Shown here one piece after another: positions 5,571 through 60,946 of a DNA stretch of 64,000 nt (the first letter of the stretch is position 1; each line of letters opens with the position of its first letter). This stretch comes from Podarcis melisellensis. Lineage: Eukaryota. The stretch is taken from the NCBI GenBank assembly GCA_964234715.1, contig OZ174275.1; one strand, written 5' to 3'. The position numbers and the translations under genes were made by a program. The notes beneath the pieces are model-generated. The model was not told the origin of the DNA. It saw only the letters and a list, made by a program, of their open reading frames with translations, and made no database searches.

Positions 5571-29007
<23,437 letters not shown>

Positions 29008-29207
29008 NNNNNNNNNNNNNNNNNNNNNNNNNNNNNNNNNNNNNNNNNNNNNNNNNNNNNNNNNNNNNNNNNNNNNNNNNNNNNNNNNNNNNNNNNNNNN
29101 NNNNNNNNNNNNNNNNNNNNNNNNNNNNNNNNNNNNNNNNNNNNNNNNNNNNNNNNNNNNNNNNNNNNNNNNNNNNNNNNNNNNNNNNNNNNNNNNNNNN
29201 NNNNNNN
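29008..29207. other. Assembly gap (200 N)
   Basis: Run of N read directly. Confidence 1.
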
Positions 29208-32600: not shown

Positions 32601-32884
32601 TCACAAACTGCCATTGTAATGTGTTAAGCTCTAAGCCCTCTAAGGTTCAGGTTAAGTACTAAGGGAACTAATGAGCACTGGGTTTTAAGTTCTGTACCTT
32701 TGTGGGAATTTGACAGCTTACACAACCATTGGCTTTGATAGAATTGTAAATTCATACCTTCTTCTGAGAGAAGGCTGATAGGAAGATTGTTCTTAGGCAT
32801 ACAGTTTCTTGAAAATGTAATCTACAGTTTTGTTTTTTAAGCGCTTTTTAAGTATCCTATCTTTCCACACCACTTTCATTTTAG

Positions 32885-33001
32885 GAAATGCCAGCTCTTT
32901 AGTTGATGAATTTGTAGCAAACAACATGTCACTCTCTGCTAATTGCTTGGAAGATGATTTAATCAACATTGCTTTTGAAGTTTGCAACACTAAAGAAACA
33001 G
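32885..33001 (+). CDS. KASH5-like exon A (first EF-hand helix; candidate ATG 32926)
   Basis: ttttag| ... MSLSANCLEDDLINIAFEVCNTKET ... G|gtacgt; cf. KASH5 LEEQILNSTFEACDPQRTG. Confidence 0.82.
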
Positions 33002-42000: not shown

Positions 42001-45000
42001 TTGCCTTGAATGTAAAGCAAACAAATACATTATATTTGTACAAAAATAATAAATGTGAACTAGATAATGTGTCAGAAGAGGGCAGTATTCAATTATACAA
42101 TCAGAGTAGAAGCTAGTTAAGTAAAAGGTATGTGCCTTTTTGGTTATTTTCTAAGACTTTAACCTTATGGGATTGTAAAGTCTAATTTTATGACCTGTAG
42201 TTCTGATTAAACCTAGGCTGCACTTGGTCTTACAGTTATTCATGAGTCTTGTTACAGCTGATAAATTATAATCACAGGACTGAGGACTCTATAATATGTT
42301 TCAACACCTGAAAGCATCTTTTGTTCTGTAGTTTTCCCTCTTCAAACATCTATATCCTTATCTTTCTAGGAGCTGAAACAGAAAATGGATCACTCACTAG
42401 TAACTGTATTACAGACATTGGCCAACTTATGCCCATTCATTGAAACTTGGAACAAAGTCGTAAAAAGATTAGAAACTTTTCTGGAAGGGCCACAACTTTG
42501 GATGAAATCACCTTGGTATGTTTTGTTTTTCCTTAAATAAAGAGGCAGCAATCTTAAGCATACTTAACTTGGAAGTAAATCCTTCTGACATTAAATGGAC
42601 TTGCTTCAGGGTAACATAGATGAGCCTTGGCTGCCAGATTTTTGTACAGGAGCAAACAATGACACAATCAACAAGAGTTCAGCTGCAAAGTGAAAAAAAC
42701 ATTTTTGAGGCCAAATTGTGAGTGGGATGTTTGTCATGAGCTGACTGTAAATTGTCTTTTTGTGTTGGAAAATCCAATTGTGTGACTCCACCCGAAATGA
42801 AGTATTGGGGGGGGGGGGGAATCCTTAAATCTCTCATGTTAATCTCCACTCCCTCTTTGATTGTCAAAGCTTGAACTTTTGTTCTGTCCTACATACATAT
42901 CTAGCAGACAACCAGATGTCACCTAGTAGACAGTTTTTAGAAGGCAAGTGGCAGGAGGCAGTTGTGGATGCCAAGGATAATATCACTTGGGTGTGCCACA
43001 AGGTTGCCAAAATTGCTCAGGTGGAGATTTGTAGGGTTGCTGTTGTTGACATCTGCCTGTCTCAAGGGAAAATGGAGTGCGCCTCTGGGGGTGAAGTCAA
43101 TTTGCTACATTAGCAGCACCAAAGTGACCTCCCTGGGATGCAAGTCTGAGCAGTGTGTTTGGAGGTCCCCTCTGGAATGGTAAAATCTGGGACATTTGAA
43201 AGGCACAGGAACTAAGCTTCCTTCAGAACCAGAAGAGCACCTCAGGATGATTTGCAAGGGGGGGGGGACACAGGGCTAAAGTTAACTAAAGAGAATCCCT
43301 GAATGAGGGCAAGATTGGTAATTCTCTTGGGGGATTGTGGGACTTATGGTAAGAAAATCATCCCGGAAGCTGTAAAAAGGGAGGGTCATCAGAAGTAGTT
43401 AGGGTTTCATCCATTTAATCCTAGCCATTTCTACCAAGAAGTAAGTCCTCCTGAATTCAATGGGGCTTCCTGCTAGGTAAGCAGTTAGGATTGTAGCCCT
43501 AGTTGTTCATTTTGAACAGGAAGTCACATATTTACATTATATTGCATTTATAGAACATAAAAAATAAATGGAAAAACTATATCTAATGTAAGTTAGCCTG
43601 AGTGGAAGCCAGAGGGTTTCGGGTGGTTGTTTTTTTAGTGTTTGAAGGCTATGATTTAGCCAAAATGGCATTTAACTCACTCCAGTTTCTCTAAGGCTTA
43701 GATAAATGTCAGCTATTTATAACTCCTAAATTTCAAAATAAAACATAATACTGTTTTAAAGATTTCAAGGCACATCTTTGCTTAGCGGTGTTTGTTTCTT
43801 TTTTAAAAAAAATAATTTAACCTTGTGGTACCTAACAAAAATAGGAAGGGGAAAGGACACTAACAATAGTGAAAAGATAAATCCTGCCATCCGGGAACAT
43901 CTAATCTCATGTATACATTTCACTTTCTTTAGTGGGATTGTGTTATTATCTGTGTTATGGTTTAGTTAGTGTTTAGAGAGTCTTGCATCTTTGTTTAGCG
44001 CTGGGCAAAATAAAATGGGAAAGTGAATCCTTGTTCTAAATATAACCAGGAGGCGAGTTAATAAATCAAGGTTGAATGGAGTGCACAGCCCACAGTATGA
44101 AAAGGCCATGTTTTTAAATGAGGAATTCCTTCTGTGCAAAGAATAGTCATGTGCCCATTGGAATTCCCACAGCACTAAGACAAGGCAACTCTCTTGGCTG
44201 GAAAACATAATGGCAATATTGGTTCAGAAGCCAATGGTATCTCAACTGAATATGGGTAGCTGGCAGGTTTTATTAAATATACATAAGGAAACAACAACAA
44301 CAAAAATCCTAATCTTTATTGGCCCCCCTTTATTTTATAGCCTTAATGTTGAACTTCATGAGGAGGAGGAATTGGGTGAAACAAATGAACAATTGGAACA
44401 AAGCACACTTGAAGCAGAGTTTCAAGCTTCCACAAACTATATGATGAATTGTGACAGTTGCTGCTTTGAGAACGCGAACATCAGAACTTCCAAAAAGTAC
44501 CATGGAGCCAATCTAAGCAAAAAAGCTTTGCAAAATGTAAATGCAATCACTTTCAGCAGCCAAACGTTAACACAAACTCCAGAAAAAGACCAAATATTGG
44601 TACAATGTCAGATCTGGAAAAAATTGTTAGGAGGGAAAAAATGGTGGAATCCAGAAGGAAGGCTGGAAGCCATTTTGGAACTTTCTAAGACACTGGCAAA
44701 TGACAAGAATACTGTGTTAGATGAAAAAAAAGAATCATGTAAAGAGGAACATAAAATTCAGCCAGAACAGAAGGGAAACCTAGCTGCAGCTATAAAACTG
44801 AAAGAACTGGTTCTTAGAATTCCCAAAGATCTCTGTGAAGGTGTATCAGAAAGCAATGTGACAATTCTATACGCCCAACAGATGATAAAAGCACTTCAGC
44901 TGTGGATTTCTGAAGGGGAAGGAAACTTTCTGTTTCAGGAAAACTCAAAAGAAACAAAGGAGAATTTTCAAATGGATGAAAGGATGCCAAACTTCACTCA

Positions 45001-47408
45001 GGTAGTGTATGGAATGCAAAACTTAATATAATTTGAAGCTCAATGAGCATTATAATAGCTCATTTCTGTTGCCTTCATAGGAAGATTTCCCTGCTTCAGT
45101 GCACTTTATTTTCCAAGCTTCAGTTAACGAGCAGCATGCATGCTGTACTCATTTAACTTATTTAAGATTTTAAAAATCTGTACCCATAGACTATCTATAA
45201 TAGCTAAACAATTTTATTAAAATAGGTGACTACATGAGGGTCCTGAAAGCAACTCTGAAGCTATTTTGAGCACATAGAAGGCAAAAGCAGCCAAAGCGTG
45301 GGAATAATATCCAGTGTTAATCAGAGTAGACCTGCTACTACTACTACTAATAATTTAATTATTTATACCCCCAACATTTGAGAGCCAAAACACATGCACA
45401 TATGAGCACAGCTTCATGGGATAGAGCTGGATAGCTCAGTTGGTTACAGCATGGTGCTGATAATGCCAAGCTTGCAGGTTTGATCCTGGGACAACTGCAT
45501 ATTCCTGTATTGTAGGGAGTTGGACTAGATGATCCTCAGGGGTCCCCTCCAAATATACAATTCTATGATCAATAGGAGTTCAGAAGATTATGGGAGAGAG
45601 GGACCAAAAAGGTCATGTGTGTTGTGTGAAGACATCCCCACCACATCTCTAATGGGAACAACACAGTGATTTGACCTTGCTGTGTTTTAAGCTGCTAATG
45701 TGAACATACAGTTTACTTCTTTTCAGACACTATATGAAAAGAGAAACAGGGATCAAGCTGAAGCATGCCCAGCCTCCTCACATTAATTGTAGGGGTAGAG
45801 AGCACTGTCTACACATTTAGGAGTTCTCTGCAGGGTTTGGGCAGGAAGGGGTTGATGGAGCCCAAAGGATTTGTTTAAACTTCCTTCATTGTCCATGGTA
45901 AAGCGTGCCAGTTGGAGATTACTCAGGAGGGCTGCACAGAGCTAATGCTTGGAAGATGGCACCAACATGCCTCTTGCAGATTAATATTACAGACATTTTA
46001 GATAGGGAGCATTTCTTTTTCATGGTTTTGGTTGGGCTTCTTTTCATAGTCAGAGCATATGTTTTCTCATCTCTACAGGGATAATGCAGCTTTTAATATT
46101 CAGAACTAAAATATTGTGTTTATTCAGTCTGCAGAACCAACAAAGTGTGAGGACTTCAATCACAGCAGTGACAGCATAACATTTGTTGGCATGAAAAATG
46201 AGCTACACCATTGTTTTTCAATGGCTCATCAATGTTCAGCACATCAAGAAGACAACAATAAAATGAGTGGTAGGAGAAAACATTCCCTAGAAAACGCTAA
46301 ACAGAGTGCTGTTTCCTCTCTCCCACTATGCAATTTGGCTAATAAACCTGGAAGTGTGTTATGAAATTGACTTTAATTATTCAGCAAACATTGTATCCTA
46401 TATACCAAACAGAAATAAATGACATTTCTCCTTAGGGTTTCTCCAGACCTGCTATTCAGCATTCGTCTTGATGTGCTTGCTTAGAGCTTAAGTGTTAGTC
46501 TGTGTCTTTACTGAGCATTCATTCTGATTTGCTTATGGGATAGATATACAACAATGAGCATCCGTCCTGATACGTTTGCAGTGAGGGTACACGTGTTCCC
46601 ATTGATAATTTGTTCTTCCCAGACTTTTCAGTGAATGTCCCTGTCACTTTCCTAACCGCAAAAGAGGGGATTTATTGTGCTAGGGTGACAGAGCATTTCA
46701 ATCCTCTTTAATTGCACCAACCTTTATTTCCAATTTGTTCCTGAATCCCTCCTGCAAAATAGTGAGATTTGCCCCATTAATTTTTTTTGCCAGCAGCACA
46801 CAGTTAAGACTGTCACTCGGTTTCATGTTTTTTCTCCTGCCAACCGGACGATCTCACCCTCTCATTACTTTAACTGATGTCGTTATGTTTTAATTTACCC
46901 ATCCCAACTACTCAGGTATTTGCCATTGGACTTGCGGGCAACTGCCAGCTTCCTATCCTCCCCCCACCTTTAAAAGTCTATCAGATATAGAGGATTCAAA
47001 GTTGCAGTTTTTGTTAGCAAATTTATTTGTATGCAGCATCTCCATGAGCATCATTCCTGATTATTTAAATTTCAGTTGTTGAGTAGGAAGATAAGTTAAA
47101 CTGTTGCTAGGTATAATCAGACTGAATTGCCTGGAGTTGTTCTGATGGGTTATGGTTGCCAGGCTATTGTTGCCTGAGATAGAGAAAAACATATGCCACA
47201 TCTATACGCTTGAATGAGGATGTTCAAGGCAAGGATGGCACTGTTTCTGCAAAGTTTCATTTTTTCCCTAGCATTTCTTGTGTGGTTCAACTGTATCATT
47301 TTAATAAGTATCTAATAGTACTTCTCTGTTCTCTTTGTACGAGCAGATGAAAAATACTCTGAAATGGAAAAACCTGCATTGGTAATGAAAAACAGAAAAC
47401 CCAGCAAG
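32926..47408 (+). CDS. KASH5/long-LRMP-like EF-hand plus coiled-coil protein (predicted 12-exon model, at least 626 codons); separate gene or upstream module of IRAG1
   Basis: join(32926-33001,33186-33366,34922-34983,35883-35961,37741-37896,38812-38929,39987-40034,41275-41421,42370-42515,44341-45001,46128-46269,47347-47408); all AG/GT, phases compatible, no stops; N-terminal half aligns by eye with recalled KASH5. Confidence 0.8.
33186..33366 (+). CDS. KASH5-like exon B (EF-hand pair core)
   Basis: GVPAYAFIKYLEDMTGHSLENGKLLMLYNMLDPKRQNVLVDRETFHETMKEWIAICCQD, donor gtaagt; cf. KASH5 YLEAVTG...NSLDP...VDLDTFLVVMRDWIAAC. Confidence 0.9.
34922..34983 (+). CDS. KASH5-like exon C (linker)
   Basis: Poly-T acceptor aacctag|, MSETEVDKFTTTTNRNLHCN, donor gtgagt; supplies the required phase 2 to 1 bridge. 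Confidence 0.72.
35116..35341. mobile_element. Tc1/mariner (Tigger-like) MITE
   Basis: TIRs ctgtggtacctcgggtta / taacccgaggtaccactg followed by TA; internal ggttaagaac repeats. Confidence 0.85.
35883..35961 (+). CDS. KASH5-like exon D (acidic linker)
   Basis: ccccttgaacag|, MMSFLSDEDADIYEGRPGDSEMDIS, |gtaatg; phase 1 to 2. Confidence 0.7.
37741..37896 (+). CDS. KASH5-like exon E (coiled-coil start)
   Basis: AFDLNSSVEDLKYMNQKMTAQLLGMQKVMELSEESYLQLTDDIVELRDRLA; cf. KASH5 ADLLSSLEDLELSNRRL...QRSMETAEE...EEILALRKQL. Confidence 0.87.
38812..38929 (+). CDS. KASH5-like exon F (coiled coil)
   Basis: MQKPLENYKNIWRELEDTKNKMASLHEENGVIRKCVASL; cf. KASH5 QQALQFAKAMDEELEDLKTLARSLEEQN. Confidence 0.83.
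39987..40034 (+). CDS. KASH5-like exon G (coiled coil)
   Basis: aaacag| KESVKSLGIKLVSLEE |gtaagt; phase 0-0; cf. KASH5 EKEQQHLVAEMETLQEE. Confidence 0.8.
40469..40961. mobile_element. Non-autonomous hAT (Charlie-like) transposon
   Basis: Perfect 15-bp TIRs caggggtctgcaacc / ggttgcagacccctg; perfect 8-bp TSD ACCTAGGG at 40461-40468 and 40962-40969. Confidence 0.92.
41275..41421 (+). CDS. KASH5-like exon H
   Basis: ttag| NAKAHEERNTSVFEALLFLHSREHFENFLQEIVSQKDSMSMFQALMEEI |gtaagt; cf. KASH5 NGKLLAER. Confidence 0.7.
41593..41728. mobile_element. Palindromic hAT-type MITE
   Basis: TIRs caggcttcctcaaact / agtttgagaaagcctg; perfect 8-bp TSD ATATAGAA. Confidence 0.9.
42370..42515 (+). CDS. KASH5-like exon I
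   Basis: tctttctag| ELKQKMDHSLVTVLQTLANLCPFIETWNKVVKRLETFLEGPQLWMKSP |gtatgt; phase 0 to 2. Confidence 0.68.
44341..45001 (+). CDS. KASH5-like exon J (large 661-nt exon, E/K-rich)
   Basis: Inside the longest ORF of the window (44210-45031); ttttatag| LNVELHEEEE...ERMPNFTQ |gtagtg; phase 2 to 0. Confidence 0.72.
45423..45569 (+). mobile_element. tRNA-derived SINE with CR1-like 3' tail
   Basis: gatagctcagttggttacagcatggtgctgataatgccaag...ggactagatgatcctcaggggtcccctccaa...attctatgat. Confidence 0.8.
46128..46364 (+). CDS. KASH5-like exon K (internal donor after 46269, or terminal with TGA at 46362-46364)
   Basis: tattcag| SAEPTKCEDFNHSSDS... in phase 0; donor gtagga at 46270; alternatively reads to a stop with AATAAA at 46414-46419. 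Confidence 0.5.
   Translation, partial: SAEPTKCEDFNHSSDSITFVGMKNELHHCFSMAHQCSAHQEDNNKMSGRRKHSLENAKQSAVSSLPLCNLANKPGSVL
47347..47408 (+). CDS. KASH5-like exon L
   Basis: Pyrimidine tract then gagcag|, EKYSEMEKPALVMKNRKPSK, AAG|gtaagg; phase 1 to 0. Confidence 0.55.
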
Positions 47409-47953
47409 GTAAGGAAATGAGATTATAAGAACCTTTGGTATTTTATATTTGAAATTAAGCTATATTCATGTAGGCAATTTTTCATGTAGGAGTTGTTTCC
47501 TCTAATGGAACAACCTGCATTTCCAGGCAAACTGGGGTTACAGCATCATACCTCATTCATTTCCTGGTGTAGTGGTTTTTAATTTCTTGGTATCGATAGT
47601 GAACAGGTATTCGTTCATTCCTAGACTGAAACTAATTTCTACAAAGCAATAACAACTATATTCATGACTTTCGTAGTGGGATCTTGAACTACATCATGAT
47701 AAGCAAGCAGGTCTGGCTCTAGTAAGTAGAGACTGCCTGGCAACCCTATTGTGCTCTGTGGGTAAAGCTGGGTACAGATGGAATAAACTGGAATAAAGTA
47801 ACAGATTCTCCAAGCTTTATTGCCTTGATAGGTTTTTGTTGGCAATGGGTGGTTTGCAGAAATTACAAGTGTATAGGTATTGACAAAATGGGAATATGTG
47901 TCTTTGGAAAAGAAAATATAATAGAACTCTTGGTGCTTGGGAACCATTTCAAT

Positions 47954-48089
47954 CATGGGCGTAGCCAGGATTTTTGTTGGGGGACGCAGGCATTTTGGGG
48001 GGGCAGAATCTCAGCTATGTATTTTTATTGATTTTTATTGGTTTAGGTGGCCAGCTGCCCCTCCCTGCCCCCCCCCGGCTATGCCCATG
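47954..48089. mobile_element. hAT-type MITE
   Basis: TIRs catgggcgtagcc / ggctatgcccatg; degenerate 8-bp TSD atttcaat / attgcaac. Confidence 0.75.
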
Positions 48090-50971
48090 ATTGCAACGCT
48101 CTAAAGGAACATGAGGTGGACACCTGACTGAAGCTTAAGGACATGTGGGCCTAGTCAGGGACTAGATGGGAAACCACCTGAGATATGTGCTTTGTATGTT
48201 ACCTTGGGATTTATAATGGAAAAAAGTGAGATGTAAAATACCAACTTTCCAAATCTCAAGGGAAAGAATTTTGCAGAGGAGAATAAGAAAACTGAAATAA
48301 CTTTGGAAAGTTGCATGTAAGTATGAAGGTTGAGGTGGAACTGGAAGCAGCAGTCCAAGATAGTTCCTAGGAGTAAGGAGTTGTGCCAGGAAATAGGGGT
48401 TGAGGGATAAAACCACAAATAAGGATTAGAAAACCAGCAAAGAATACAAAATGCACTAAAGCTCAGGAAGACCATGCTGCTTGGCCAAGGCCCAACTAGA
48501 ACAGGGAGGCAACTTTTGCTCCTTCCTATCCAGGAAGAGATCATGGCCAGCCTGGGTGGGTGGAGTCAACTCAGGGCTTGAGAGTATTTCATTGTCTAAA
48601 TAAATGCTGCAACCTGCAGTTTGAGGACTTATTAGGCCAGCCACACACAGATCCAAGGACTTACATGTTTCCAGGTTCAAATTTAACATTATGCTAAATG
48701 TGTAGCTAGCGACTACACCCGATATTTTTCTTTATTTAAATACAGGCATGGTGGGGTGATTTTTCCATGGGGGCCACAGATGTGGGATGGGGAGGTTTGA
48801 TCTTTCTATCGCAGTCACAATATGGACAAGAATCCCCCATCCCAAGCTACAAAAATTAGGCAAATGAACTAGAACCTTTCTTAATACGTCTGATGCTCAT
48901 GCTTGAGGTGGGATTGGGACTGCAGCTAGGGAAGGAAGGATTAGATTTAAATACTCCTCATGCTGTGGACCCCATGAAAGTGAGCCTCCTTCCCCGGCAC
49001 CTGCAGTTTAACTAAGAAAACTCCCAAATATAGCTAGCCACACATTGAACATAACATAGAGTATCCTGAGTTGCATTAGCTGGAGAGAAGGAGAGATGGA
49101 AATGGATGCAATTCTGATTTAAGTACAGTTATGTTTTTAGGATCGTCCCCCGTCCCCTCCTTCATCTAGACTAAATTGTTGCATGCCACATTATTTTGTT
49201 ATAGTATATTCAGGACACTGGGCAGAACCCTGTCAGTGGAAGCCCTGCGTAAAGACTCCCACTTGTACAACAGGGCATTCCCACCCCCCATATCCTCCCC
49301 CCCAGCCTATCCCTGCACCTCCCAAAATTGGCTCTGGTAGTTCAGGAGAACCTCCAGAATAGTTTGCAGGGGGAGAGGACGTGGGATCATTCCATCTGGC
49401 AAGCTGATATGCCTGTGCAGACAGAATGTTTGTCACAGTGCAGTGTTGAATTCCATCCACTAAATGTTGCCATTTTAATGTAGGATTATAGTATGATGCA
49501 GTTTCATCAGCCTAGTTTGTTATACTCCCTTACTTGTTGTCTACTTTGAAACAAATACAGTACTGTAATTCTAATTCAGTTACTCTGCTCTTATAAAATC
49601 TGACTGCAGAATTAACAAATAGTTGAACCAATTTCCAAATGATCCTTATTAAATAGCTTTTACTAATGTAAAAGCATTCAGGACTCCTCAAAATTGCATT
49701 TCATACAGTTTTTAAAAGATAGTTGTCATTCCCCTTATTTTACTGGATTCTTGATCTGTGTGGAATAACTTTTTGTAGTTTAACAGTTTTGGTTTTTGAT
49801 GGCATGTCTCTCTTCCTTGGGGAGTAAATTCTCTTGCTAATGAACGGAGAATAGTGTTCCCCAGGCCTCTCTTGACTTTTGACTAAGAATAACATCTGTC
49901 ACTACCAAGAAGCTGTGTGTAAAATTAGAATTTCTCAGGGCAGATTGAGAACAAGATTTGTTTATGCCTTGTGCTTTTAAAATAGGATGACGTTGCAGAG
50001 TTTGCTTTATTGTTAGTGTGTGTGCTCTAGGCATCAATTGGAGAGAATGAGTATCTTCTACACCACCTATGGAAAAGAGGTTTCATTTATGGCCGCAAAA
50101 ACTTTCAAATATAATACCTTGTAAGAACATTACTTGATTTCTTGGTGAGAAAATTTCTTTGGAATAAAATAACTCAAATGTATCTATAAGAACTAGGCTA
50201 AGACCTGTATGAAATGAAATATTGCCCAAGAACATCTTTGAAACCTTATGCATGGCAAAAGCAGTACTGTATGTGACAAATACTTTATCTAGTCTTGGGG
50301 TACCCATGGCCAAAATGTACATGGCCAGACACTCTTCACTGTGTGGTAGAACCACTGTGTGGTTTTCATACCACATTCATTATCAGTTGAAGCTGCAGTT
50401 GTGCACAGCAAGGCAGAAGCTTCAGTGGAATGTTGCGGAGGTAGTATTGTCTGCAGAAGTCCATATCTTCCTTTCCTAGGTAGTATACATTTCACAACAA
50501 AGGGCTTGGGATGTTTGATTTTTTTTTTTAACTGAGTCTAGATACTTCTCTAAATCTATTTATTTACAGTATGTATATTCCACCTTTTAGATGGACAATG
50601 GGCTTCCAAGTGAAAGGCTGCTGGTCCCTTATTAAGGCTCTTGGGGTGGAGGAGTGATGATAGAAAATAAAAACTGCTTCTAGTGTTATAACTAAGCAAA
50701 CTTGCATGTGAAAATACTTCAATTTGCTCTTGGCACATTCTATCATTTGTTTTGAAGGTATCATGGAGAGTTTGGTGCATAGTTTTATGAAACTGGACAT
50801 CCCCTTTTGTCTTTAGTTTTTCTGTACTGGTGGGGTTTGATTCTGTTGATCAAGAATGGCAAAATGTCCCCCCTCCATGTCAAGCACTTTCCCAGTCTAT
50901 GTCTAAGCGAATTCAGATGAATAGACTACCTAAGGGCAAGCAGATGTGGTCTCTGGCAGCATGGTTGTTTG

Positions 50972-52508
50972 AAGTGCTGTTTTTCTAGAAAAAGAAGTGT
51001 CAGAACTCACCATGAACACTTCCCCTGTTCTCTTATAATGGCAATGACAGGGATGCATTCTGGCCCCCACATTGTTTTACCTATTCTTAAACGACGTAGA
51101 AGCGAGCCTAATGGACTCAGATGGACACCTTCCAAAACTAGGAATGAGAAGGACCCCCTTGTTGTTATATGCGAATGATGCGGCCATCATTTCACATTCC
51201 AGACCGGGTTTGAAATATCTGCTGAGGAAGTTTTCTGATTACTGTTTTGGAAATGGCTTATCCATTAATTACGAAAAATCAAAAATTTAAGTATTCAAAA
51301 GAAGCTTCTCCTGATTTAAATTGGTACTGGATGGCCATAACCTTGAACAGATTAAATACTTCAGTTATCTAGGGCTCACTTTCCATCATACAAGATCTTG
51401 GAAGTACCACTGGCAAACCTCCCTTCAAAAGGCGGAGATCACAAAGCTAGCCATACTCAAATTCTTTTTCGCAAAGGGTCTGTTCCAGCAAGTATGTTCC
51501 AGCAACCTTAAGGGTTTTCAGTGCAAAATCCGTTCCCCAACTCCTGTACACTGCAAATGTCTGGCATAATGGGGACCTGCCTAAGCTAGACAGCTTTCAG
51601 GCAAAATTTCTACGATCTCTGCTGCAGGTACCCAACTGTGTCCCCAACTCCATACTTCTCCTAGAAGCTGGTGAATGCCCAATTACAACTAAAGCATGGT
51701 GGGCTGCCCTAAAACACTGGCTCAGGATTGTAGTGTTTCATCTAGGGAAGAGTTTATATCAACACCTGACCAGTGAGGAGTTTGTCAGCAATTGGCAGAA
51801 AACCATGGCTAGAAAAGCCACCTCTATTGTCACCCCCCCAACCCTATTACCTGGGTTATGAAGGTGCCCTAAAGACATTAAAGCAAAGATTATGGGATAA
51901 TACACACAGTGACTTGCGATCCCGATCACATGCAGTCTGTAGTTCGTTGGCAGTAGGAGTACAATACGGGCATGTCTTTAAGTTAACACCTTACATTAAA
52001 AACCTGACAGTACCAAATTACCGAAGGTTATTCACCAAAGCCAGACTAAACCTTTTTCCTTCTGCAGTGTTGGATGGCAGGTTGAGAGGAGTTCCCTACC
52101 AGGACAGACTTTGCTTGTGTGCCCAAGTCATTGATTCTATAAAACATATTTTGCTGCACTGTGCGAAATACGAGCAAGCCAGAGCTGAATTGATATTACC
52201 CTTGCTGGTACCTTTCCTGGGAAAATCAGAGGCTCACTATGTCAGGTTCCTACTGGAAGACCGGACAAACGCTAGAACATTAGCAGTGACAAAGTTTTTA
52301 TCGGTGGTTGCAAGAACCAATGATCCCTATCTTTAAGTCTGAACAAAACACTTGTTTAACGTGGTGGTAGGCTGTCTAAATTGTGTATTGCTTTATAATG
52401 ATTTGTTGGGTCTCTGGACCGTAATAAAGATTGATATAATGGCAATGACGCCCACCTGAGAATTGCCGGAACTGAGTTTTGGTGAGTTCCGGCTGAAAAA
52501 AAGCCCTG
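50972..52508. mobile_element. hAT-type MITE split by a LINE (arms 50972-51048 and 52435-52508)
   Basis: Ends aagtgctgtttttc / gaaaaaaagccctg; TSD gttgtttg / attgtttg; related inverted fragment at 34202-34283. Confidence 0.7.
51049..52434 (+). mobile_element. 5'-truncated non-LTR retrotransposon (RT and C-terminal region, RTE-X-like), disrupted
   Basis: RT motifs QGCILAPTLFYLFLND, LLLYAND (YADD), YFSYLG; C-terminal RLCLC...IKHILLHC; aataaagattga 3' end; perfect 15-bp TSD tataatggcaatgac. Clade name is inference. Confidence 0.88.
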
Positions 52509-53519
52509 ATTGTTTGTATCATCCTTCTAAGCCATGGGGAAGATTTGGCTTGCATCCGATAACAGATGTGTGGTTAAGATGGCTTTGTGGACTTTGGAAG
52601 AGAGATCTTGACCTGACATGACCAAGAATAGAAGCACATGGACACAATGAAGCAGTTGGCGAGACAGGCCATAGCTATAGAACCTTGGAGAGCTCCGACT
52701 GATAAAAGGAATACCCCCCCAAACCCTGGCCCACCCCCACCAGGCTTTCTGTGTGTCTCAATTGCTTCTCATTCTGTGTGCTATTGTAGAGCAGGAGGTG
52801 CTTAGCCTCTTGGGTGAATTGAGCCTGGAAGGCCTAAGGATCCCAGTTCAGGCTCCACAGGTTCAAAGCTGTTATGTTTCAGGTTTTGTATCAAGACCTC
52901 CTGGTCATGTTCTTCAGCTCAAGATGTGATGGCCATGGGCTTGACTGGCTCAGTCTCTTCTCTTTCCAAACCTCAGCTATAACTCAAGGCCAGCACTACA
53001 GCAGGCGTTATTCCAGAGGTGCCAGTCATAAACATTTCCATTCTGTGTTCATAAGGTGGCTCAGTGGCCTGAGGAAAGTTGGTATCAGTGGTAATAAGGT
53101 AGTAACATAATTATGATAAGCTTGAAAGCACCAGAGCCTTTTTCGAAGAAACAGACTAGTCTTAGTAGAGATTTGTCTATTTTTGTATTGTGTTTGTGTC
53201 AAGCTTCTGACATTGATTGGCTGAGCTAGTGCAATGACATGGAGCATTCAGTTGCCCAGGGAACAAAAAGAGTTTGTGGTCTAGCTTCTGTGAAGAAAGG
53301 GAATGTTGCACACAAGAACAGGGTGACACTGTAGGAGAGCACCAAGGAGGCAAGAGGTAAGGAGGTTGAAGAAAGAGAGGAAACCAGGCACTAAGATTGA
53401 GAGAGGGGTGGAAGAGGAGGAGGCTTGGGGGAAAGGGTAGAAGAGGCAGGGAATTCAGGCAAGATGGGGCTAATTGGAGAGAACGCCGTAGAATCTGCGC
53501 AGCAGTTAAGGTCAGAAGG

Positions 53520-53632
53520 GAAGTTTTTAATATTTAATGCTGTATTGTTTTTAACACTTTATTGGAAGCCGCCCAGAGTGGCTGGGGAAACTTAGCCAGA
53601 TGGGCGGGGTATAAATAATAAATTATTATTAT
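53520..53632 (+). mobile_element. LINE/SINE 3' tail
   Basis: ggaagccgcccagagtggctggggaaacttagccagatgggcggggtataaataataaattattattat. Confidence 0.55.
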
Positions 53633-56616
53633 ATAAGAGACTTTATGGTTGGGGGAGAAGCAACAGAGTGCTAAGAAACCAGGGCTGGATCTACATTAAT
53701 CTTTTAAATGTTATTAGTTATATCGTTCTATAACATCACCTTACCATTGTGGGTGGCTCATAGCTCTGCAGTGCCCTCTGGTGTCATATTTTAATAACCC
53801 ATTATTAACCACGAGTGTAGATCCACTCCAGGTCAAGGGACAAAGCAAGTGTGGCCTGAGAAGGTACAGAAGAGAGATGGGAAGGTACAGAACTGAAGAA
53901 TGAATGGGACAAAATTGGGAAGTAGGATTGCTGCTGTGCACTACTGGTAGGAAGGAAGTTGGCCATTGGGACTGGTAGGGCAGGAGACAGGGAGGTCAGC
54001 AGTAGGTGGAGACAGAAACAACGATAGGTGGAGTCAACTAATTCTAGTTTTGTCCCCATCCTCCTCCCTACTGAGTTCTACAATGGGAACACTGACATTA
54101 AGGGGGAGGAAGCTGACAGCCAGTGCTGCCCCCTGGACTGGATATAAAACAGAAGGTAGGCAAGCAGGGCAGACAGAGGTTGATGGGGCAGTACCACATC
54201 TGCCCTAATGGACAAGCCTCCACAGGTTCACTGGGAGCAATATTCACTGGCCTTAAAATTTTGAGAGAGCACATTTAGCAATAGATAAGTGGAAGTAAAG
54301 CACCCTTTTGACTCAAGTGACATGTGTTGGCTCATAGGAGATTAAACTAGTGGTTTGCCACAATAGCTAACAGACTTTCCACCCATATACAAACTTACTT
54401 GTTGATTATGCTAGGATGTTGTTTTCATTCCTGTAGGATCGTGGACAGAAAACAGGATGTGACTGTGCATTATGGTTTGACTATTTCTTGGTGAACAGTA
54501 AATGGGCACCGTTAACCCTGAAAAATGTTACATACATTCTGTGGCAGTACTAATACTAATTAAAAAGCCTTTTAAATGTCTGTGACATATGTATTATGTC
54601 CCTGTGTGTAATATGAGACAAGTATTTTGTTACAGACTCATGGACTATTAACAAAGTAACTAACAAAGTATACAATTGTTTTCAGAAAACTAAAGGATTT
54701 GGGCAAGTTATTGATCTAAATAATAGATATACTTGTGTGATGAAATTTCTTGACTGGCAAAATTGATTGCTGCTTTTCTGGCTGCTGGAATATTCAGTAT
54801 TGGCTCAGTTAGGACATCTAAGTGTATTTGGCCTTCTTAATTATCAAATTAAAAACACTAAATGTGTTTCATTCTCAGTCTGGTTTTCCAAGAAAAACAT
54901 TTCTGCATCTGATTACTGAAGTTTTAAAAATTCTTTGCTCTTCTGTGATAATTGCTTCATGTAAAACAACAACAACCCTGTATTGCCTATGTCAGCTAAT
55001 CATTTTAAATTGGTGAATGACTTCCAGTTGTGCAAACTTGATAAATGTTCATCTTCCATCCTGCTAGGAACCAGTCCTAATATTATTTTCTAGCTTTGTC
55101 AATTTTACCACTTTCTTTGAGGGGGGTGGAGTCTATTGGACCTACATATGAATGGATATGCATTTTGTTTAGTTCATCATTAGCAAATATTGCAAGAATA
55201 GATATGCCTGAATTATAATGTATTCTTAGCATTGATCCACACTTTTCCATGTACAATTAGATTTAAGCTTCAACAGAAGTCTGAAAGACTACCGTATATT
55301 GTTGAGAGGGAGGGAGGGAGAATGTCCTCTCTATCTCATGAATGTGCCTTCCAAATATCTACAAAACTGCATAAGGATTACATGTCCCCATTTCAGGCTT
55401 GTTTTTACTGCCCTTTCTCTATCTTTGTCCTAGGGTTTAAGGATGTTCAATCTTTTGCCATTGTGTAGTTTACACTAGTCATTGTTTAGTTACGCAACTA
55501 GTTTGAGTAAGTCCTGTTCATGAGCAGCCATTGCATTGGGCAGAGTGAGGTGCCTACCTCAAGCAACTGATTTTGGGTGTGAAGGGCAGCAAATGTATGG
55601 TTATTTGTTTATGTGTTTTTCCTGCCAGACAGGAGAAGAGGTGGTTGCCTCAGATGCCAAAATAATGGGTACTGTGCACCTTGATTGGGTAGGGGGCCAG
55701 CGGGGGGGGGGGGGAGGTACTTTTCTGTTCTGGCTCAGGCAGAAAAATGTCTTCTGCCTGCTCTGGCTGGGGATGACAGAGCACTGATGTCAGCAAAGCT
55801 TGTTTACATTCTGCTTGCTTTCACAATGATTATCATCAGATTCTTGGAAGGTGGCTCTTCATTTCCCTAAGTTCCTTTATTTTCTACATTTATCCAGTAC
55901 AGTTTTTAAAATGTGGTATGTGTGTGTGTGTGTGTAATGCAAATGATACTTATGTAAAAGTGTTTTGGAAAAGTACTGACTGTGAACCAAGAGACTGCTT
56001 TCATGAGCCATAGAATTAAAATAGATGGCTTAAAAAAATTAACCCTTCCACCCTCAGATATTTTTGCAGATATAGACACCCAGTGCCTTTTCTTCTTTCT
56101 GGGGGTACTCGAGGGTACGCAGTACCAGCACTTCCCCCCTCCAGATGTTAAAAGGGTGACACTTATTGTAACAAATTCATGGGGAGTACCAGCAGCTTTA
56201 AACAAAACAAACCAAAACACTGCGGTAACCCATATAGAGATGATGTTAACAAGCAAGTGTTGTTTTTGATAGTACAGATGGATCTGTGTGTGACTATCAA
56301 AATGCAAATGCAGATGTTATTTTCAAACACAGATTTATCAGATTCCCAGGACTGGACTGGAGATCAAAGTGATAAAAGAGCTTTCTATTTCATGCCATAG
56401 TGAATTGAACTACAGAAAAGTACTTGATCCCCCCACCCCCCGCATAGGTTTGTTTATTTCCTTGTTGGGAATAATAGTCTTCAGAGTTAACTGCCATCTT
56501 ATTTATATCTGCTGTAAATAAATGTAACAAGAAGAATGCTATCCATTCACCTAATCATTTAAAATCCCAATGAAACATGAATAGGATTACCATGTAATTG
56601 GATTGTGAATGAGGCC

Positions 56617-56651
56617 TTGTTTGTTTGTTTGTTTGTTTGTTTGTTTGTTTG
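56617..56651. repeat. (TTTG)n microsatellite
   Basis: Read directly. Confidence 0.95.
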
Positions 56652-56939
56652 CCTTCTTTTGGGGATTTATACCCTGCCCTTCAATAGAATTCTCAGACAA
56701 TCTTAGAATAAAAACAAACAAACACAAAATATGCACAAGAATGACAATGAATAGCATTACTGGATTGTCACATGTACAAAACTGAGGACTGGAATCATTT
56801 TCCTCTTTTTGGATTAGAAGGCTGCATACTCTTACATCTTTATAATTTTGCTAGATTTAGAGTACAATTCTATACCTGGGATCTGATGGCTGAAGAGTGG
56901 TAGAATTTGGTGGGAACTGCTCTGTGTTGCATAAACAAG

Positions 56940-57144
56940 CACTGGTGGAGGAAGAGGAGTGCGGGGGGAGCGCACCGCCCCCAGCAGCGCAATCCCGGTT
57001 GGGTGTCATCGCGGCTGCCCCCCTCCCCGCTCCTACTGGGAGCCACACCCCTGCAGGCGGTGCACCACACCCCCAGGACACGCACCAGCCCCGCCCCCAC
57101 CTGCATTCCGCCCCCTGGTGCCGGAGCATGAAGCTCTGTCACTG
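56940..57144. mobile_element. GC-rich hAT-type MITE
   Basis: Perfect 8-bp TSD TAAACAAG (56932-56939 and 57145-57152); degenerate TIRs cactggtggag / ctctgtcactg. Confidence 0.75.
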
Positions 57145-57234
57145 TAAACAAGTCCACAATATGTTGCTGCTGCTGTGGAGTTACTAGAGAGCCCAGACAT
57201 GATGTTGCATAAAAAGAGCAAATGCAACTCAATC

Positions 57235-58495
57235 CCACATCACTAAAAAATATGCAGAGCAAAGCTCCAAAGACCTGAGTAAATAAAAATGTTTTTATCT
57301 GGTATGTAAAAAGAGATAGTGATAGTGCCACAGGTACCTCCCTGGGGAGGGCATTCCACAAGTGGGGAGCCACCATTGAGAAGGCCTGTTCTCATGTTAC
57401 ACCCCCCTCCATATCTCCCTTGGAAGGGAGTACACAGAGAAAGGCATTAGATGATGAACACAGGGTCTAGATTGGGTCATGTAGGCAGAGGAGATCCTTG
57501 AGCTATTGGAGTACTGAGCTGCGTAACACTTTATAGGCCCAAACCAGCACTTTGAATTGGACCTGGAAACAAATTGGTAGCCAAGTGCACTGTGCCAGGA
57601 TTGGTCTTATGTTCAGGCCATCTTGCCCCAGTCATTAATCTGGCTGGCTACTGAAGTCTGCACCAATTTCAGTTTCCAAACCATCTTCAAAAACACCCCC
57701 ATATATAACACAGTCATTTTGTAATCTAACCTAGACGTTACCAGATCATAGCCAACAGAAGTTGAGCTATTCCTGTCCAGATAAGGGCCTAGCTGGGTCA
57801 CCAGCTAAAACTGATTGATGGCGCTTCACACTACCAAAGCCACCTGGACCTTAAGTGATAGTAGTGAATCTAGAAATACCCCCAATCTTTGAACCTACTC
57901 CTTCAGAAGGAGTGTAACCTCATCCAAAGCAGGCCATGTCCCACCCATTTGGTCAGGTGAACCACCCACTAATAGTGCAACAGTCTTATCTGGATTAAGC
58001 TTCAGTTTATTGACTCTCCTCCAGTCAAGGCCAATACATCAGTCTAACCACTGCCACACTTGCAGATGTAAAGGAGAGATATATCTGTATATCAGCATAT
58101 TGCTGAACCTGTACTACAATTCTTTGGATTACCCCTGCCCTTCAGTAATTTCATGTAGATAATAAACAGCATAGAGAATAAAATTGAACTCTGTGCCTCT
58201 GCATACTGAAGGCTCCATGGGGTCAAATACTATACCACCATCTGGAGAAGGTCATCCAAGTGGGATCAGAACCACTGCAAAGCAGTGCCACCCACCTCCA
58301 GCTCAGATAGGCACTCTAGAATGCTCTGGTTGATGGTATTGAAAGCTGCTGAGAGATCAAGGTGGATTAATAGGGACACACTCCCATTTCTCTTTCCAGA
58401 CACAGGTCTTCAAACAGGGTGACCAAGGCAGGTTCTGTGCCAAAACTGGGCCTCAACCCCGATTGAAATAGATCTAGAAAATCGGTTGCCAGAAT
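57235..58495 (-). mobile_element. Degraded L2-clade LINE ORF2 fragment
   Basis: Minus-strand remnants LDLSAAFNTI, PYLDRNS...LVTSRLDY...KLKLVQ, VAPHLWNALPREV...IKTFLFTQVF, typical of L2 ORF2. Confidence 0.85.
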
Positions 58496-60834
58496 CTTGC
58501 CAATCTACTGGAAGTCACTCAGAGATTGATCAGTAGATTCTTCCCCATCTATCACATGGTGTTTTAGAAAATATATTCTACTTTTCTAGCTCCTTTATCA
58601 TGGTTAAAAGATCTGGCATTTCACTTTACATCTGACCTCCTAGTGGTTTGGCTTAATATATCTCTAACATTAAATATGCATCAATTTTAAATTTTGAAAA
58701 GTATTCCTTGATCATATACAGAGTGCTTTTCTTCGGTAGTGAGTAACTTCAAACAGCCTACATATATCAGTAATTTGGGAGGTGAAAAGGTCAGGAGGTC
58801 TAATTCTAGAAAACCCTGAACTTTGGTATCTCATGCTTGTAGAAATTAAGTACTAAATGTTGTTGTAAAAATTAAAAGCTTTGTTTTAAGTTAAAACTAT
58901 GAATCAAAAAAGAAGTTTTAGAAAGAAGATTAACAACCTTGGAACAGAACTCCATCAGTGGTTCAGATTTTTATTATTTTTTTATGAGATAGTCTTTGAA
59001 GAATCTCATGCTCTTTCTAGCTACAACTTCATAATGCCATGACTTTTAAATGCTTTGGCTTTTAAGAGGGGTTTTGTTTTGTTTTTTTGGGCTCTTACAC
59101 AGTCTAGGTCACTGACTGGTTGTCCCTGGCTTTGTTCCATTTCTGAACTCTTCTTTCCTTTGTGGTTTGTGTCCCTCTCTGTATGTTCAGTTGTTTATGT
59201 CTTCGTGAGTCTAGTTTTCACTACCATTCCATCAGAAGGTTAAGTGTCTCCCGGGCCCTTCAGTATGTTAAAAAGTAGAAGAAAAAGTTAAAACAACAAC
59301 ATTGTGATAAAATGAAAAGTCTGTGTGTTAGTTTTGGAAAATCAGTTTTTAAAGGTGCTGTTGCCCACATGGACTTCACTGCATGTATGTGGGTCTGAAG
59401 GAGTGGGAGAGAGATGCCGTTCGACAAAAAGAGAGGGAGAGATCTATGTGTGGTTGTATAGATGGGTGGGGGGAGATATATGCATGTTGGTCTGTGGTTT
59501 GTATGTGTACAGTGAGTGCTTGCGGGTGCAGCTCAGGTGCAAGGAAGAGTGTGGTGTGACTACCTTATATATCTTCCCTGGCATCAGGGAATGTTTTCTG
59601 TTGTTGTATGGAGAGGAGATCAATTTTGTGAGATCTTCTTAATCGAAACAAGCAGGACATAACTGACTTCCCATGGAAGGTGTGAGGTTGTCAGGTTTGG
59701 GTTGGGAACAGAAATGAGTGCACTTTCTCTAATTTTGTGTTATGCCACACGTCACTAGGGAACCATTTTGTGAGTGGCACCCATGGCACCTTCTCAAAAT
59801 TCAGAATGTGTCCAGTGAAGCAACATGACTGGCTACCCCTGCTCTACCATCTATTGAAAGTACATTGCTAGTTACTTAAAAGATTCAGGGTACAGGCCTA
59901 TGACACATATTTGTATATATGATAATATTCATGTGTATATGCTTAGATCTCTGAGCAGATGAAGATGGTGGTGTCTCACCAGTATTATGCTTTGCAGCCC
60001 TATAAGCACATTTTTAAAGAGCAGAGAAAGATGCAGACAATCCAGGGCAGACAAAAGATTTTGGCCTCAGACCTCCAATGGCCCTGGTCTGGAGTCATAG
60101 AAATGAAGTATTTATCGATCCCTTGACAGGCTAGGAATGATTCACGAACCACAAGTCTGACAGTTTAGTTTATGCTGAGTGAACTGTAGAACTGGGCCCT
60201 AGGCAAAATTTTGTGTACAGATACCAGCAGATTGTGAAAATAGCCTCTTTTCTTCTCATGGAAGTTGTAAATAGCAGCCCCTTGAGTTTACATTTAATAC
60301 TTTTTTTAACTTTCCCTTCAAGGACCTCAGAGGGGTTTACAGTTATTCCCCCTAATAGGAAAACACTATCCTTATGTGGAGCTAGGCCAAAGTTCTCTAA
60401 ATGTTTGCATGTACCGGTACCAAGTGGCTTGGGCTGGTGCCTTAGCCCCAAAGGGCTGTGTGTATTTGGAAATCCCAGAACGATTGCATTTGCTCTTGTG
60501 TGCACCTGTGTTAAGGGTTAACAAATACATCACTTCAGTCTTGCCATTTCATCTGCTTCTTCCTTGCCCGATTTAAATTTAGTTATTCAGAAATGAGTAA
60601 CATTCTCATGTTCTGAAGCGTGTGCGAATGCAAATGGGTGTTCTGCTGGTATTTGTTCTTGGCATTTGTGCTGAAAAGGGGGAAGCCTTTCACTCTAATT
60701 CCTTGAGACACCGAAGAGACTTTTTGAAGAGTCAGTTAAAAACAAAACTCATTTTTAACGTTAGTTGCTCAGCTTGCTTTCTTGAGTTAGAAAGTGCTTT
60801 AGCTTAGTTAAGGGAGCCAGATGTAACACATTGA

Positions 60835-60844
60835 CCTTAAATGG
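60835..60844 (+). promoter_or_regulatory. CArG box (SRF site) CCTTAAATGG overlapping the IRAG1 start codon
   Basis: Exact CC(A/T)6GG consensus at the 5' end of a smooth-muscle gene. Confidence 0.65.
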
Positions 60845-60946
60845 TAAAAGCTCCCAGAGCGAGCAGAAGGGAGAGAGAGAGAAAGAGAGAGAGAGAGAGG
60901 GAAGCTTCCCCGAAGGGGGAAAACAAGAGGAATAGCTCAGTTTTAG
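60841..60946 (+). CDS. IRAG1: IRAG1 (MRVI1) first coding exon; remainder of gene beyond the window
   Basis: MVKAPRASRRERERKREREREASPKGENKRNSSVL then G|gtaagt; matches the recalled mammalian isoform N-terminus MVKAPQSEERLARGGKENNSVLD; divergent orientation to CTR9 fits known synteny. Confidence 0.8.
60870..60899. repeat. (GA)n microsatellite inside the IRAG1 first coding exon
   Basis: gagagagagagaaagagagagagagagag read directly. Confidence 0.9.

What the first reader, a model, noticed from the sequence alone, without database searches (positions are those of the whole stretch)
46128..60946. Possible long IRAG1 isoform: the upstream adaptor module has no membrane anchor and is phase-compatible with IRAG1 exon 2
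Seen: I found no transmembrane plus PPPX KASH exon after exon L. Exon K has a phase-1 donor (46269|gtagga), and the canonical IRAG1 first exon also ends in phase 1 (60946), so a K to IRAG1 exon 2 splice would be in frame. Alternatively exon K reads to TGA at 46362 with AATAAA 50 nt later. Established: IRAG1 and IRAG2/LRMP share the MRVI1 coiled coil and a C-terminal membrane anchor, and LRMP has short and long forms. Inference: the locus may keep the ancestral EF-hand/coiled-coil/MRVI1/TM architecture. It could then make a soluble ~636-aa form, a long ER-anchored form coupling IP3 receptors to dynein, and the short smooth-muscle IRAG1 from an internal promoter.
Basis: inference. Interest (0 to 1): 0.78.

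Follow-up and report, generated by a model that had tools for sequence, protein, structure and literature searches.

The report
Long KASH5-like IRAG1 isoform, lizard

Summary
The window is a lacertid lizard locus. It is colinear with the Podarcis muralis IRAG1 locus at about 95% DNA identity. Thirteen + strand exons (30729-47408) match residues 1-654 of RefSeq IRAG1/MRVI1 isoform X1 (1653-1656 aa), which carries EF-hand_9, KASH_CCD, MRVI1 and a C-terminal hydrophobic anchor.

Spliced contigs from relatives show the joints 42515>44341, 45001>46128 and 46269>47347. One contig runs 2763 nt beyond exon L. So the long isoform is real, but its route is K>L>exon 2. Exon 2 lies about 8 kb past the window end and has a phase-0 acceptor. 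A K>exon 2 splice that skips L would hit a stop after 6 codons.

The "IRAG1 first exon" near 60.9 kb is real but non-coding:
- An RNA contig reads through 60946 and uses the donor at 61026.
- The ORF from ATG 60841 is out of frame with IRAG1 and is shifted by a 2-nt indel in Zootoca.
- The short form starts at a later ATG (833 aa in Lacerta agilis).

No contig covers the exon K read-through. A different module-only form, L joined to a terminal exon at 56333-56521, is annotated in L. agilis.

Fused long IRAG1 models exist in many fishes, rays and squamates. The architecture is therefore already in databases, though I found no paper describing it. This scan had already noted the module on this same window (s1-498152). 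Interest is moderate.

The parts
30729..30774 (+). E1, the lacertid first coding exon of long IRAG1 (ATG 30729, MNYTSSISSQSMLLS, phase 1 out, donor CAG|GTAAGA)
   Evidence: tblastn of Podarcis and L. agilis models; flanks. A 75-nt inverted copy lies at 25275-25349.
32885..33001 (+). It holds EF-hand 1 and the ATG at 32926 that other squamate models use as the start.
33186..33366 (+). E3 (exon B), EF-hand 2 and the exiting helix
   Evidence: Pfam EF-hand_9, E 0.0011 on this exon alone; 98-100% identical to Podarcis
34922..34983 (+). E4
35883..35961 (+). E5
37741..37896 (+). E6, start of the KASH5-type coiled coil
   Evidence: Pfam KASH_CCD, E 1.8e-7
38812..38929 (+). E7, coiled coil
39987..40034 (+). 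E8
41275..41421 (+). E9
   Evidence: in-frame 6-nt indel relative to P. muralis
42370..42515 (+). E10
   Evidence: spliced joint to 44341 in 4 runs
44341..45001 (+). E11 (exon J), a 661-nt linker exon
   Evidence: joints 42515>44341 and 45001>46128 in 4 runs
46128..46269 (+). E12 (exon K), phase 0 in and phase 1 out
   Evidence: joint 46269>47347 in runs X1, X2 and X3
46270..46420 (+). Proposed exon K read-through: ORF to TGA at 46362, AATAAA at 46341 and 46414. No contig covers it.
   Evidence: contig depth 0 at 46300-46499 in all four runs; no more conserved than its flanks
47347..47408 (+). E13 (exon L), DEKYSEMEKPALVMKNRKPSK, phase 1 in and phase 0 out. Its internal ATG at 47364 starts the Zootoca 1010-aa model.
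   Evidence: contigs continue 394 nt and 2763 nt beyond it, and the next base is G
56333..56521 (+). Alternative terminal exon: phase-0 acceptor, 62 codons, TAA overlapping AATAAA at 56517. It would give a module-only product.
   Evidence: L. agilis LOC117056380 (P0393) joins exon L to it; sequence; the tail's frame is not conserved among lacertids; hydrophobic tail in this species
60760..61026 (+). Exon 1b, the non-coding first exon of short IRAG1. Its 5' end is not mapped. Candidate donors are 60946|GTAAGT and 61026|GTACAG. It holds an upstream ORF from ATG 60841.
   Evidence: Logan RNA contig L004 nt 1-123 equals 60904-61026 and then continues into exon 2; 99% identical to P. muralis; 2-nt indel in Zootoca inside the ORF

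Best explanation
The locus is one IRAG1 gene with two promoters and alternative 3' ends.

Promoter 1 lies head-to-head with CTR9, near 30.7 kb. It drives a transcript that splices E1-E13 (30729-47408) and then crosses a roughly 25-kb intron to IRAG1 exon 2, which lies beyond the window. The product is about 1650 aa: a KASH5-type EF-hand pair, a KASH5-type coiled coil, a long linker (exons J, K, L and exons 2-4), the MRVI1 domain and a C-terminal tail anchor.

Promoter 2 lies inside that intron, near 60.8 kb. It makes a non-coding exon 1b that joins the same exon 2. Translation then starts at the first in-frame ATG (MPTLPENEGQ), which gives the canonical form of about 833 aa.

Shown: the exon chain, its phases, the K>L splice and the continuation past L in relatives' RNA, the use of exon 1b in another squamate, and purifying selection on the module.

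Inferred from the KASH5 and Fue/Lrmp literature: the long form is an ER/nuclear-envelope-anchored dynein adaptor that also carries IRAG1's IP3-receptor and PKG-binding region.
For: - The window is colinear with the P. muralis IRAG1 locus at 93-96% identity from 29.2 to 64 kb.
- tblastn places residues 1-654 of P. muralis, P. raffonei and P. lilfordi IRAG1 on 13 exons at 90-100% identity. All splice phases agree, and the 1965 nt give 655 codons.
- P0272 scores MRVI1 590 bits and KASH_CCD 52 bits, above each model's Pfam gathering score, and EF-hand_9 23.6 bits, below its gathering score of 37.
- GT..AG joints 42515>44341, 45001>46128 and 46269>47347 appear in contigs of 3-4 runs from two related organisms. 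Introns are uncovered. X3 record 14 has J-K-L followed by 2763 further nt. Both long contigs have G after L, as exon 2 (GAG...) does and the 56333 exon (ATT...) does not.
- Sceloporus IRAG1 X1 also reads J-K-L-exon 2.
- Exon 2 has a phase-0 acceptor.
- dN/dS against P. muralis is 0.18 for E2-E10 and 0.33 for J-K-L. There are no stops, and the indels are in frame.
- Exon 1b is seen in RNA contig L004.
- Met178 of the Zootoca protein is the start of the L. agilis 833-aa form.
Against: - The RNA evidence is Logan contigs from relatives (organisms A and B). It is not raw reads of this species, and the runs are only guessed to be RNA.
- I could not read the contig sequence beyond exon L, so the link to the MRVI1 exons rests on contig length, one base and the RefSeq models.
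- Several annotations split the locus into separate genes: L. agilis 162 + 527 + 833 aa, Sceloporus 239 + 1246 aa, Lerista 560 + 991 aa, Hemitrygon 908 + 905 aa.
- EF-hand_9 scores below Pfam's gathering score in lacertids.
- Dynein binding is untested.
Confidence: 0.85

Rival explanations
1. The module is a separate KASH5-like gene with a soluble or weakly anchored product. It would end at the 56.3-kb terminal exon or by exon K read-through, and the fused RefSeq models would be read-through artefacts.
For: Separate gene models exist in L. agilis (P0271 and P0393, with P0260 as the IRAG1 model), Lerista (P0394), Hemitrygon (P0022 and P0143) and Sceloporus (P0002). The 56333 exon has a conserved acceptor and AATAAA.
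Against: Contigs continue 394 nt and 2763 nt past exon L, and the next base is G, which does not fit the 56333 exon. Sceloporus IRAG1 X1 contains J-K-L plus MRVI1. The Sceloporus 239-aa model ends in retained intron sequence. More than 60 species have fused models. The tail of the 56.3-kb exon is out of frame between lacertids.
Confidence: 0.08
2. One reading: exon K splices directly to IRAG1 exon 2 in frame, and a 636-aa soluble form arises by read-through of K to TGA 46362 with polyadenylation near 46430.
For: The TGA, the two AATAAA signals and the rather weak donor G|GTAGGA are present and conserved in P. muralis.
Against: K>L is the joint seen in 3 runs, and no K>elsewhere joint was listed. 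Contig depth is zero at 46300-46499. A phase-1 donor joined to exon 2 gives a stop after 6 codons in P. muralis. The read-through stretch is no more conserved than its flanks. Contigs drop rare variants, so a minor form is not excluded.
Confidence: 0.05
3. The module exons are decaying remnants in lizards, transcribed but without a protein function.
For: EF-hand_9 is below Pfam's gathering score and the KASH_CCD match is partial. The Zootoca assembly lacks the region. Birds and turtles show only forms of about 830-900 aa in the lists seen.
Against: All 13 exons are open. dN/dS is 0.18 and 0.33, and the indels are in frame. The module is conserved across squamate families: Pogona, Hemicordylus, Liasis, Eublepharis and Lerista.
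Confidence: 0.02

Closest known systems
RefSeq predicted long IRAG1/MRVI1 isoforms of Podarcis muralis and P. raffonei (XP_028587133.1, XP_077786555.1, XP_053247151.1; 1649-1656 aa)
   Same: Same exons, same order and same junctions (J-K-L-exon 2). Identity is 90-100% per exon, and the locus is colinear with CTR9 head-to-head.
   Different: A different lacertid species, with about 5% DNA divergence. These are computational models, and I found no paper describing them.
Zebrafish Futile cycle/Lrmp (long IRAG2)
   Same: A KASH5-like N-terminus (EF-hand-like region plus coiled coil) fused to the LRMP/MRVI1 part and a C-terminal membrane anchor. It binds dynein (PMC3787381, PMC10071310).
   Different: It is the IRAG2 paralogue and has a KASH-like PPPX end. 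The lacertid IRAG1 ends ...LQHDQRTE, without PPPX. Its role in pronuclear congression is shown only for Fue.
KASH5 (CCDC155)
   Same: EF-hand_9 and KASH_CCD. P0272 residues 28-401 align to crocodile KASH5 residues 69-458 at 29% identity, E 6e-39.
   Different: KASH5 has no MRVI1 domain and ends in a KASH domain. In this window the X position of EF-hand 1 is N instead of D, and the EF-hand score is below the Pfam cut-off.
Canonical IRAG1 (MRVI1A/B, about 830-910 aa), the ER-anchored IP3R-I/PKG1-beta partner
   Same: Same gene and same 3' exons. The short form here starts from exon 1b at about 60.9 kb (PMC10298018).
   Different: The long form adds about 820 N-terminal residues that the IRAG1 literature I read does not mention.

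Membership tests
IRAG1 gene (5' exons of the long isoform) | Exons match an IRAG1 protein and lie in the IRAG1 locus next to CTR9 | tested here: met
   13 exons match residues 1-654 of Podarcis IRAG1 X1. The window is colinear with L003. CTR9 lies head-to-head.
IRAG1 gene (5' exons of the long isoform) | Transcripts join the module exons to the downstream IRAG1 exons | tested here: inconclusive
   The K>L joint and a 2763-nt continuation after L are seen in relatives' contigs, and the next base, G, fits exon 2. The continuation's sequence was not visible, and the runs are not from this species.
MRVI1 family (Pfam PF05781) | MRVI1 domain with the IP3R-binding coiled coil and a C-terminal hydrophobic anchor | not testable with these tools
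   Those exons lie beyond the window end. The orthologue P0272 has MRVI1 at 590 bits and a hydrophobic stretch VLWIVAAVIIIFAVVLGISSLY near its C-terminus.
KASH5-type EF-hand dynein adaptors | EF-hand_9 (PF14658) at Pfam's gathering score | tested here: not met
   Window exon E3 alone scores 19.8 bits and full-length P0272 scores 23.6 bits, against a cut-off of 37. The match is still significant (E 7e-5), and Sceloporus and Phrynosoma pass at about 42 bits.
KASH5-type EF-hand dynein adaptors | KASH_CCD coiled coil (PF14662) | tested here: met
   P0272 scores 52.4 bits against a cut-off of 43.3, covering profile positions 3-166 of 191. Window exon E6 alone scores 31.8 bits.
KASH5-type EF-hand dynein adaptors | Binds dynein LIC helix 1 and activates dynein-dynactin motility | not testable with these tools
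   This needs pull-down and single-molecule assays, as in PMC10071310.
KASH proteins (LINC complex) | A transmembrane segment followed by a short luminal tail ending in PPPX | tested here: not met
   No such terminal ORF exists in 46.3-64 kb. P0272 ends ...LQHDQRTE. The tail of the 56.3-kb exon is hydrophobic but has no PPPX, and its frame is not conserved.

The most novel reading that the evidence does not exclude
IRAG1, like IRAG2/Fue, has kept the ancestral dynein-adaptor N-terminus in squamates, fishes and rays. Its long form would then physically couple an IP3-receptor/PKG signalling scaffold on the ER or nuclear envelope to dynein. KASH5 would be the paralogue that lost the MRVI1 half. 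In Podarcis-like lizards, a module-only isoform might additionally carry its own short hydrophobic tail from the 56.3-kb exon.
Probability: 0.45. Interest if true: 0.6.

Novelty: new member of a known kind. Interest (0 to 1): 0.42.

Why it matters
The IRAG1 literature I read treats IRAG1 as a smooth-muscle and platelet ER protein of about 900 aa. The KASH5-like extension is discussed only for zebrafish Lrmp, and Horn et al. 2013 state that land vertebrates have separate genes.

Here a land vertebrate keeps a constrained, spliced, roughly 1650-aa IRAG1 with the dynein-adaptor module. Database models show the same for many fishes and rays, and for IRAG2 in a bat and a quail. This makes two questions testable: whether ER calcium-release scaffolds are moved or positioned by dynein, and how KASH5, IRAG1 and IRAG2 diverged.

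For annotation, the result shows that the split gene models in L. agilis, Sceloporus and Lerista, and the truncated Zootoca model, most likely describe one gene.

Tried and rejected
- Distant fused proteins from fish and rays aligned only to the EF-hand and first coiled-coil exons, so they were useless for the 3' end.
- The PDB holds no sequence relative of the module.
- The Sceloporus and Pogona IRAG1 loci could not be fetched because the gene range exceeds 100 kb. L001 stops before exon J.
- No sequencing run is on record as RNA for this species. The runs used are relatives' contigs, so they show no starts, ends or expression levels.
- A Logan protein from the 3198-nt contig did not appear in the protein searches.
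- A TM/PPPX scan of 46.3-64 kb found nothing. It would also have missed the hydrophobic tail of the 56.3-kb exon, which came to light only through the L. agilis model.
- Conservation of the exon K read-through against P. muralis was uninformative: 3 differences in 95 nt, against 4 in 142 nt of the exon.
In one search I translated K and L joined in a local script, only to check the frame.
- No human sequence was used. The N run 29008-29207 was left as it is.
Full report
**What the window is.** CTR9 lies on the minus strand at about 5-29 kb (TPR-rich ORFs), with an N run at 29008-29207 near its 5' end. From 30.7 kb onward the + strand carries exons whose translations hit Pfam EF-hand_9 and KASH_CCD.

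A full HMMER search with the EF-hand exon gave two phrynosomatid lizard fragments as closest relatives: Phrynosoma (216 aa) and Sceloporus 'KASH5-like' (239 aa). The Sceloporus gene lies head-to-head with CTR9.

The same search found many long proteins that carry EF-hand_9, KASH_CCD and MRVI1 together. Some are named mrvi1/IRAG1 (Hoplias, medaka, the ray Hypanus). Others are named IRAG2 (sawfish, Callorhinchus, quail, Myotis).

A word search restricted to proteins of at least 1107 aa with an MRVI1 domain listed fused IRAG1/mrvi1 models in dozens of teleosts, sturgeons, rays and zebrafish. Among squamates it listed Podarcis muralis (1653 aa), Pogona (1617), Hemicordylus (1550), Liasis (1318) and Eublepharis (1386). 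It also listed gar, whose model carries KASH_CCD and MRVI1 but no EF-hand_9 hit.

**Identity of the locus.** tblastn of Podarcis muralis, P. raffonei and P. lilfordi IRAG1 isoforms (1382-1656 aa) places residues 1-654 on thirteen exons of the window at 90-100% identity. The window is colinear with the P. muralis IRAG1 locus L003 at 93-96% DNA identity from 29.2 kb to the window end. It is about 91% identical to Zootoca. The window therefore comes from another lacertid, and these exons are the 5' part of IRAG1.

Exon boundaries and phases were read from the flanks exon by exon:

| Exon | Coordinates |
|---|---|
| E1 | 30729-30774 |
| E4 | 34922-34983 |
| E5 | 35883-35961 |
| E6 | 37741-37896 |
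| E7 | 38812-38929 |
| E8 | 39987-40034 |
| E9 | 41275-41421 |
| E10 | 42370-42515 |
| J | 44341-45001 |
| K | 46128-46269 |
| L | 47347-47408 |

All phases agree. The 1965 nt give 655 codons, which matches the Podarcis protein.

**The 3' end of the module, which is the finding proper.**

However, the Podarcis and Sceloporus proteins read ...MPNFTQ | K | DEKYSEMEKPALVMKNRKPSK (exon L) | EAAAC.... The EAAAC exon is IRAG1 exon 2. It lies 24.5 kb downstream of L in both P. muralis and Zootoca, which is about 8 kb beyond the window end. Its acceptor is phase 0 (AG|GAG GCT...). Read after a phase-1 donor, it gives a stop after six codons. A K>exon 2 splice that skips L is therefore out of frame.

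**RNA evidence.** No run is on record as RNA for this species. Contigs of four small runs from two related organisms were laid on 42300-48299. They cover the exons and leave the introns empty.

They show these GT..AG joints:
- 42515>44341 in 4 runs.
- 45001>46128 in 4 runs.
- 46269>47347 in 3 runs.

Two contigs continue past exon L. X2 record 7 continues for 394 nt. X3 record 14 holds J-K-L and then 2763 further nt. In both, the match runs one base past L, so the next base is G. Exon 2 begins with G (GAG...), whereas the alternative exon at 56333 begins with A (ATT...).

Depth is zero at 46300-46499 in all four runs, so nothing supports the exon K read-through. Contigs can drop minor forms, so this is not proof of absence.

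**The 'canonical first exon'.** No IRAG1 protein matches 60841-60946. A Logan transcript contig from another squamate (L004, SRR12656982) begins with 123 nt that align to window 60904-61026 at 88% identity. It then continues into exon 2, exon 3 and the rest of IRAG1.

So a first exon does exist here. In that transcript, however, the GTAAGT at 60947 is read through and the donor at 61026|GTACAG is used. Unspliced, the ORF from ATG 60841 stops at TAA 60952. In Zootoca a 2-nt length change in the (GA)n run shifts the ORF's frame.

The region is 99% identical to P. muralis, against a background of about 95%, which suggests a constrained promoter or 5' UTR. In the IRAG1 frame, the Zootoca protein has no Met between residues 8 and 178. 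Met178 (MPTLPENEGQ) is the start of the L. agilis 833-aa IRAG1. The short form is therefore best read as exon 1b (non-coding) joined to exon 2 and the following exons, with translation starting at that ATG.

The L. agilis model LOC117056380 (527 aa) joins exon L to an exon at window 56333-56521. This exon has a phase-0 acceptor, 62 codons, and a TAA that overlaps AATAAA at 56517.

The acceptor and the poly(A) signal are conserved in P. muralis and Zootoca. A C-run indel puts the tail after ...NYRKVLD in different frames in different lacertids. In this window and in P. muralis the tail is hydrophobic (GLFISLLGIIVFRVNCHLI, KD 1.94), with no PPPX. It would give a module-only product. Its use in this species is untested.

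**Constraint.** Against P. muralis, dN/dS is 0.18 for E2-E10 (12 synonymous and 9 non-synonymous changes) and 0.33 for J-K-L (10 and 15). There are no stops, and the two indels are in frame. The counts are small but well below the neutral expectation, so the module still codes for protein.

**Mechanism.** Shown: one gene, two first exons and a shared exon 2. The long product carries the KASH5-type module, and P0272 residues 28-401 align to crocodile KASH5 at E 6e-39. It also carries the MRVI1 domain and a C-terminal hydrophobic anchor without PPPX.

Inferred: by analogy with KASH5 and zebrafish Fue/Lrmp (PMC3787381, PMC10071310), the long form is a membrane-anchored dynein adaptor. There are caveats. 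EF-hand_9 scores below Pfam's cut-off in lacertids. The X position of EF-hand 1 is N rather than D. No Spindly-type motif was examined.

**Comparison with what is known.** Horn et al. 2013 describe the fused form only for zebrafish Lrmp and state that terrestrial vertebrates have separate genes. The 2023 IRAG review mentions only 859-911-aa IRAG1 forms. No paper in the library pairs MRVI1 with KASH5 beyond that review. The fused IRAG1 models are nevertheless public in RefSeq and UniProt. I file this as a new member of a known kind rather than something new in kind. The scan had already noted the module on this same window (s1-498152); I tested that note here and it holds.

**Limits.**
- The RNA evidence comes from relatives' contigs.
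- The sequence beyond exon L in those contigs could not be read.
- Exon 2 and the MRVI1 exons lie outside the window.
- I sent no joined exon sequence to any search. The only join was a local K+L translation to check the frame.

Noticed in passing
window 26500-46800 compared with L002 (Zootoca vivipara GCA_963506605.1): The Zootoca assembly jumps from the equivalent of window 26.5 kb to that of 46.8 kb. It therefore lacks the 5' exons of CTR9 and module exons E1-K. Its CTR9 product is 1071 aa, against 1178 aa in Sceloporus, and its IRAG1 X1 starts at the ATG inside exon L. This is either an assembly gap or a real 20-kb deletion.
   Followed up: partly
window 30704-30778 and 25275-25349: The lacertid-specific first coding exon E1, with its donor, has a 75-nt inverted copy (91% identical) inside a CTR9 intron. 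Other squamate models start at ATG 32926 instead. E1 may derive from a small duplication or a repeat.
   Followed up: partly
window 45300-45700: A short stretch in the J-K intron has contig depths in the thousands and many loose ends in all four runs. It is a high-copy, transcribed repeat.
   Followed up: no
window 51048-52333 (+) and 57524-57990 (-): The L-exon 2 intron holds transposon remnants. One is an RVT_1 reverse-transcriptase fragment (E 3e-8). The other resembles the N-terminal part of a Varanus protein labelled 'LRMP', which is probably a transposon-fused gene model.
   Followed up: partly
P0131 (Myotis yumanensis IRAG2 X1, 1432 aa) and P0086 (quail, 1453 aa): IRAG2 models in a bat and a bird carry EF-hand_9, KASH_CCD and MRVI1 together, each above its Pfam cut-off. 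This is at odds with the published statement that land vertebrates lack the long Lrmp form.
   Followed up: partly
window 60862-60902: Exon 1b contains a (GA)n run whose length differs by 2 nt in Zootoca.
   Followed up: yes
window 29008-29207: An N run lies in the G+C-rich stretch between the CTR9 start and E1, the presumed bidirectional promoter. I left it as it is.
   Followed up: no
L001 17430-17606 (Sceloporus): The Sceloporus 239-aa 'KASH5-like' model ends in sequence read from the intron after the E7 equivalent. It therefore looks like a truncated model of the same long IRAG1 gene.
   Followed up: partly
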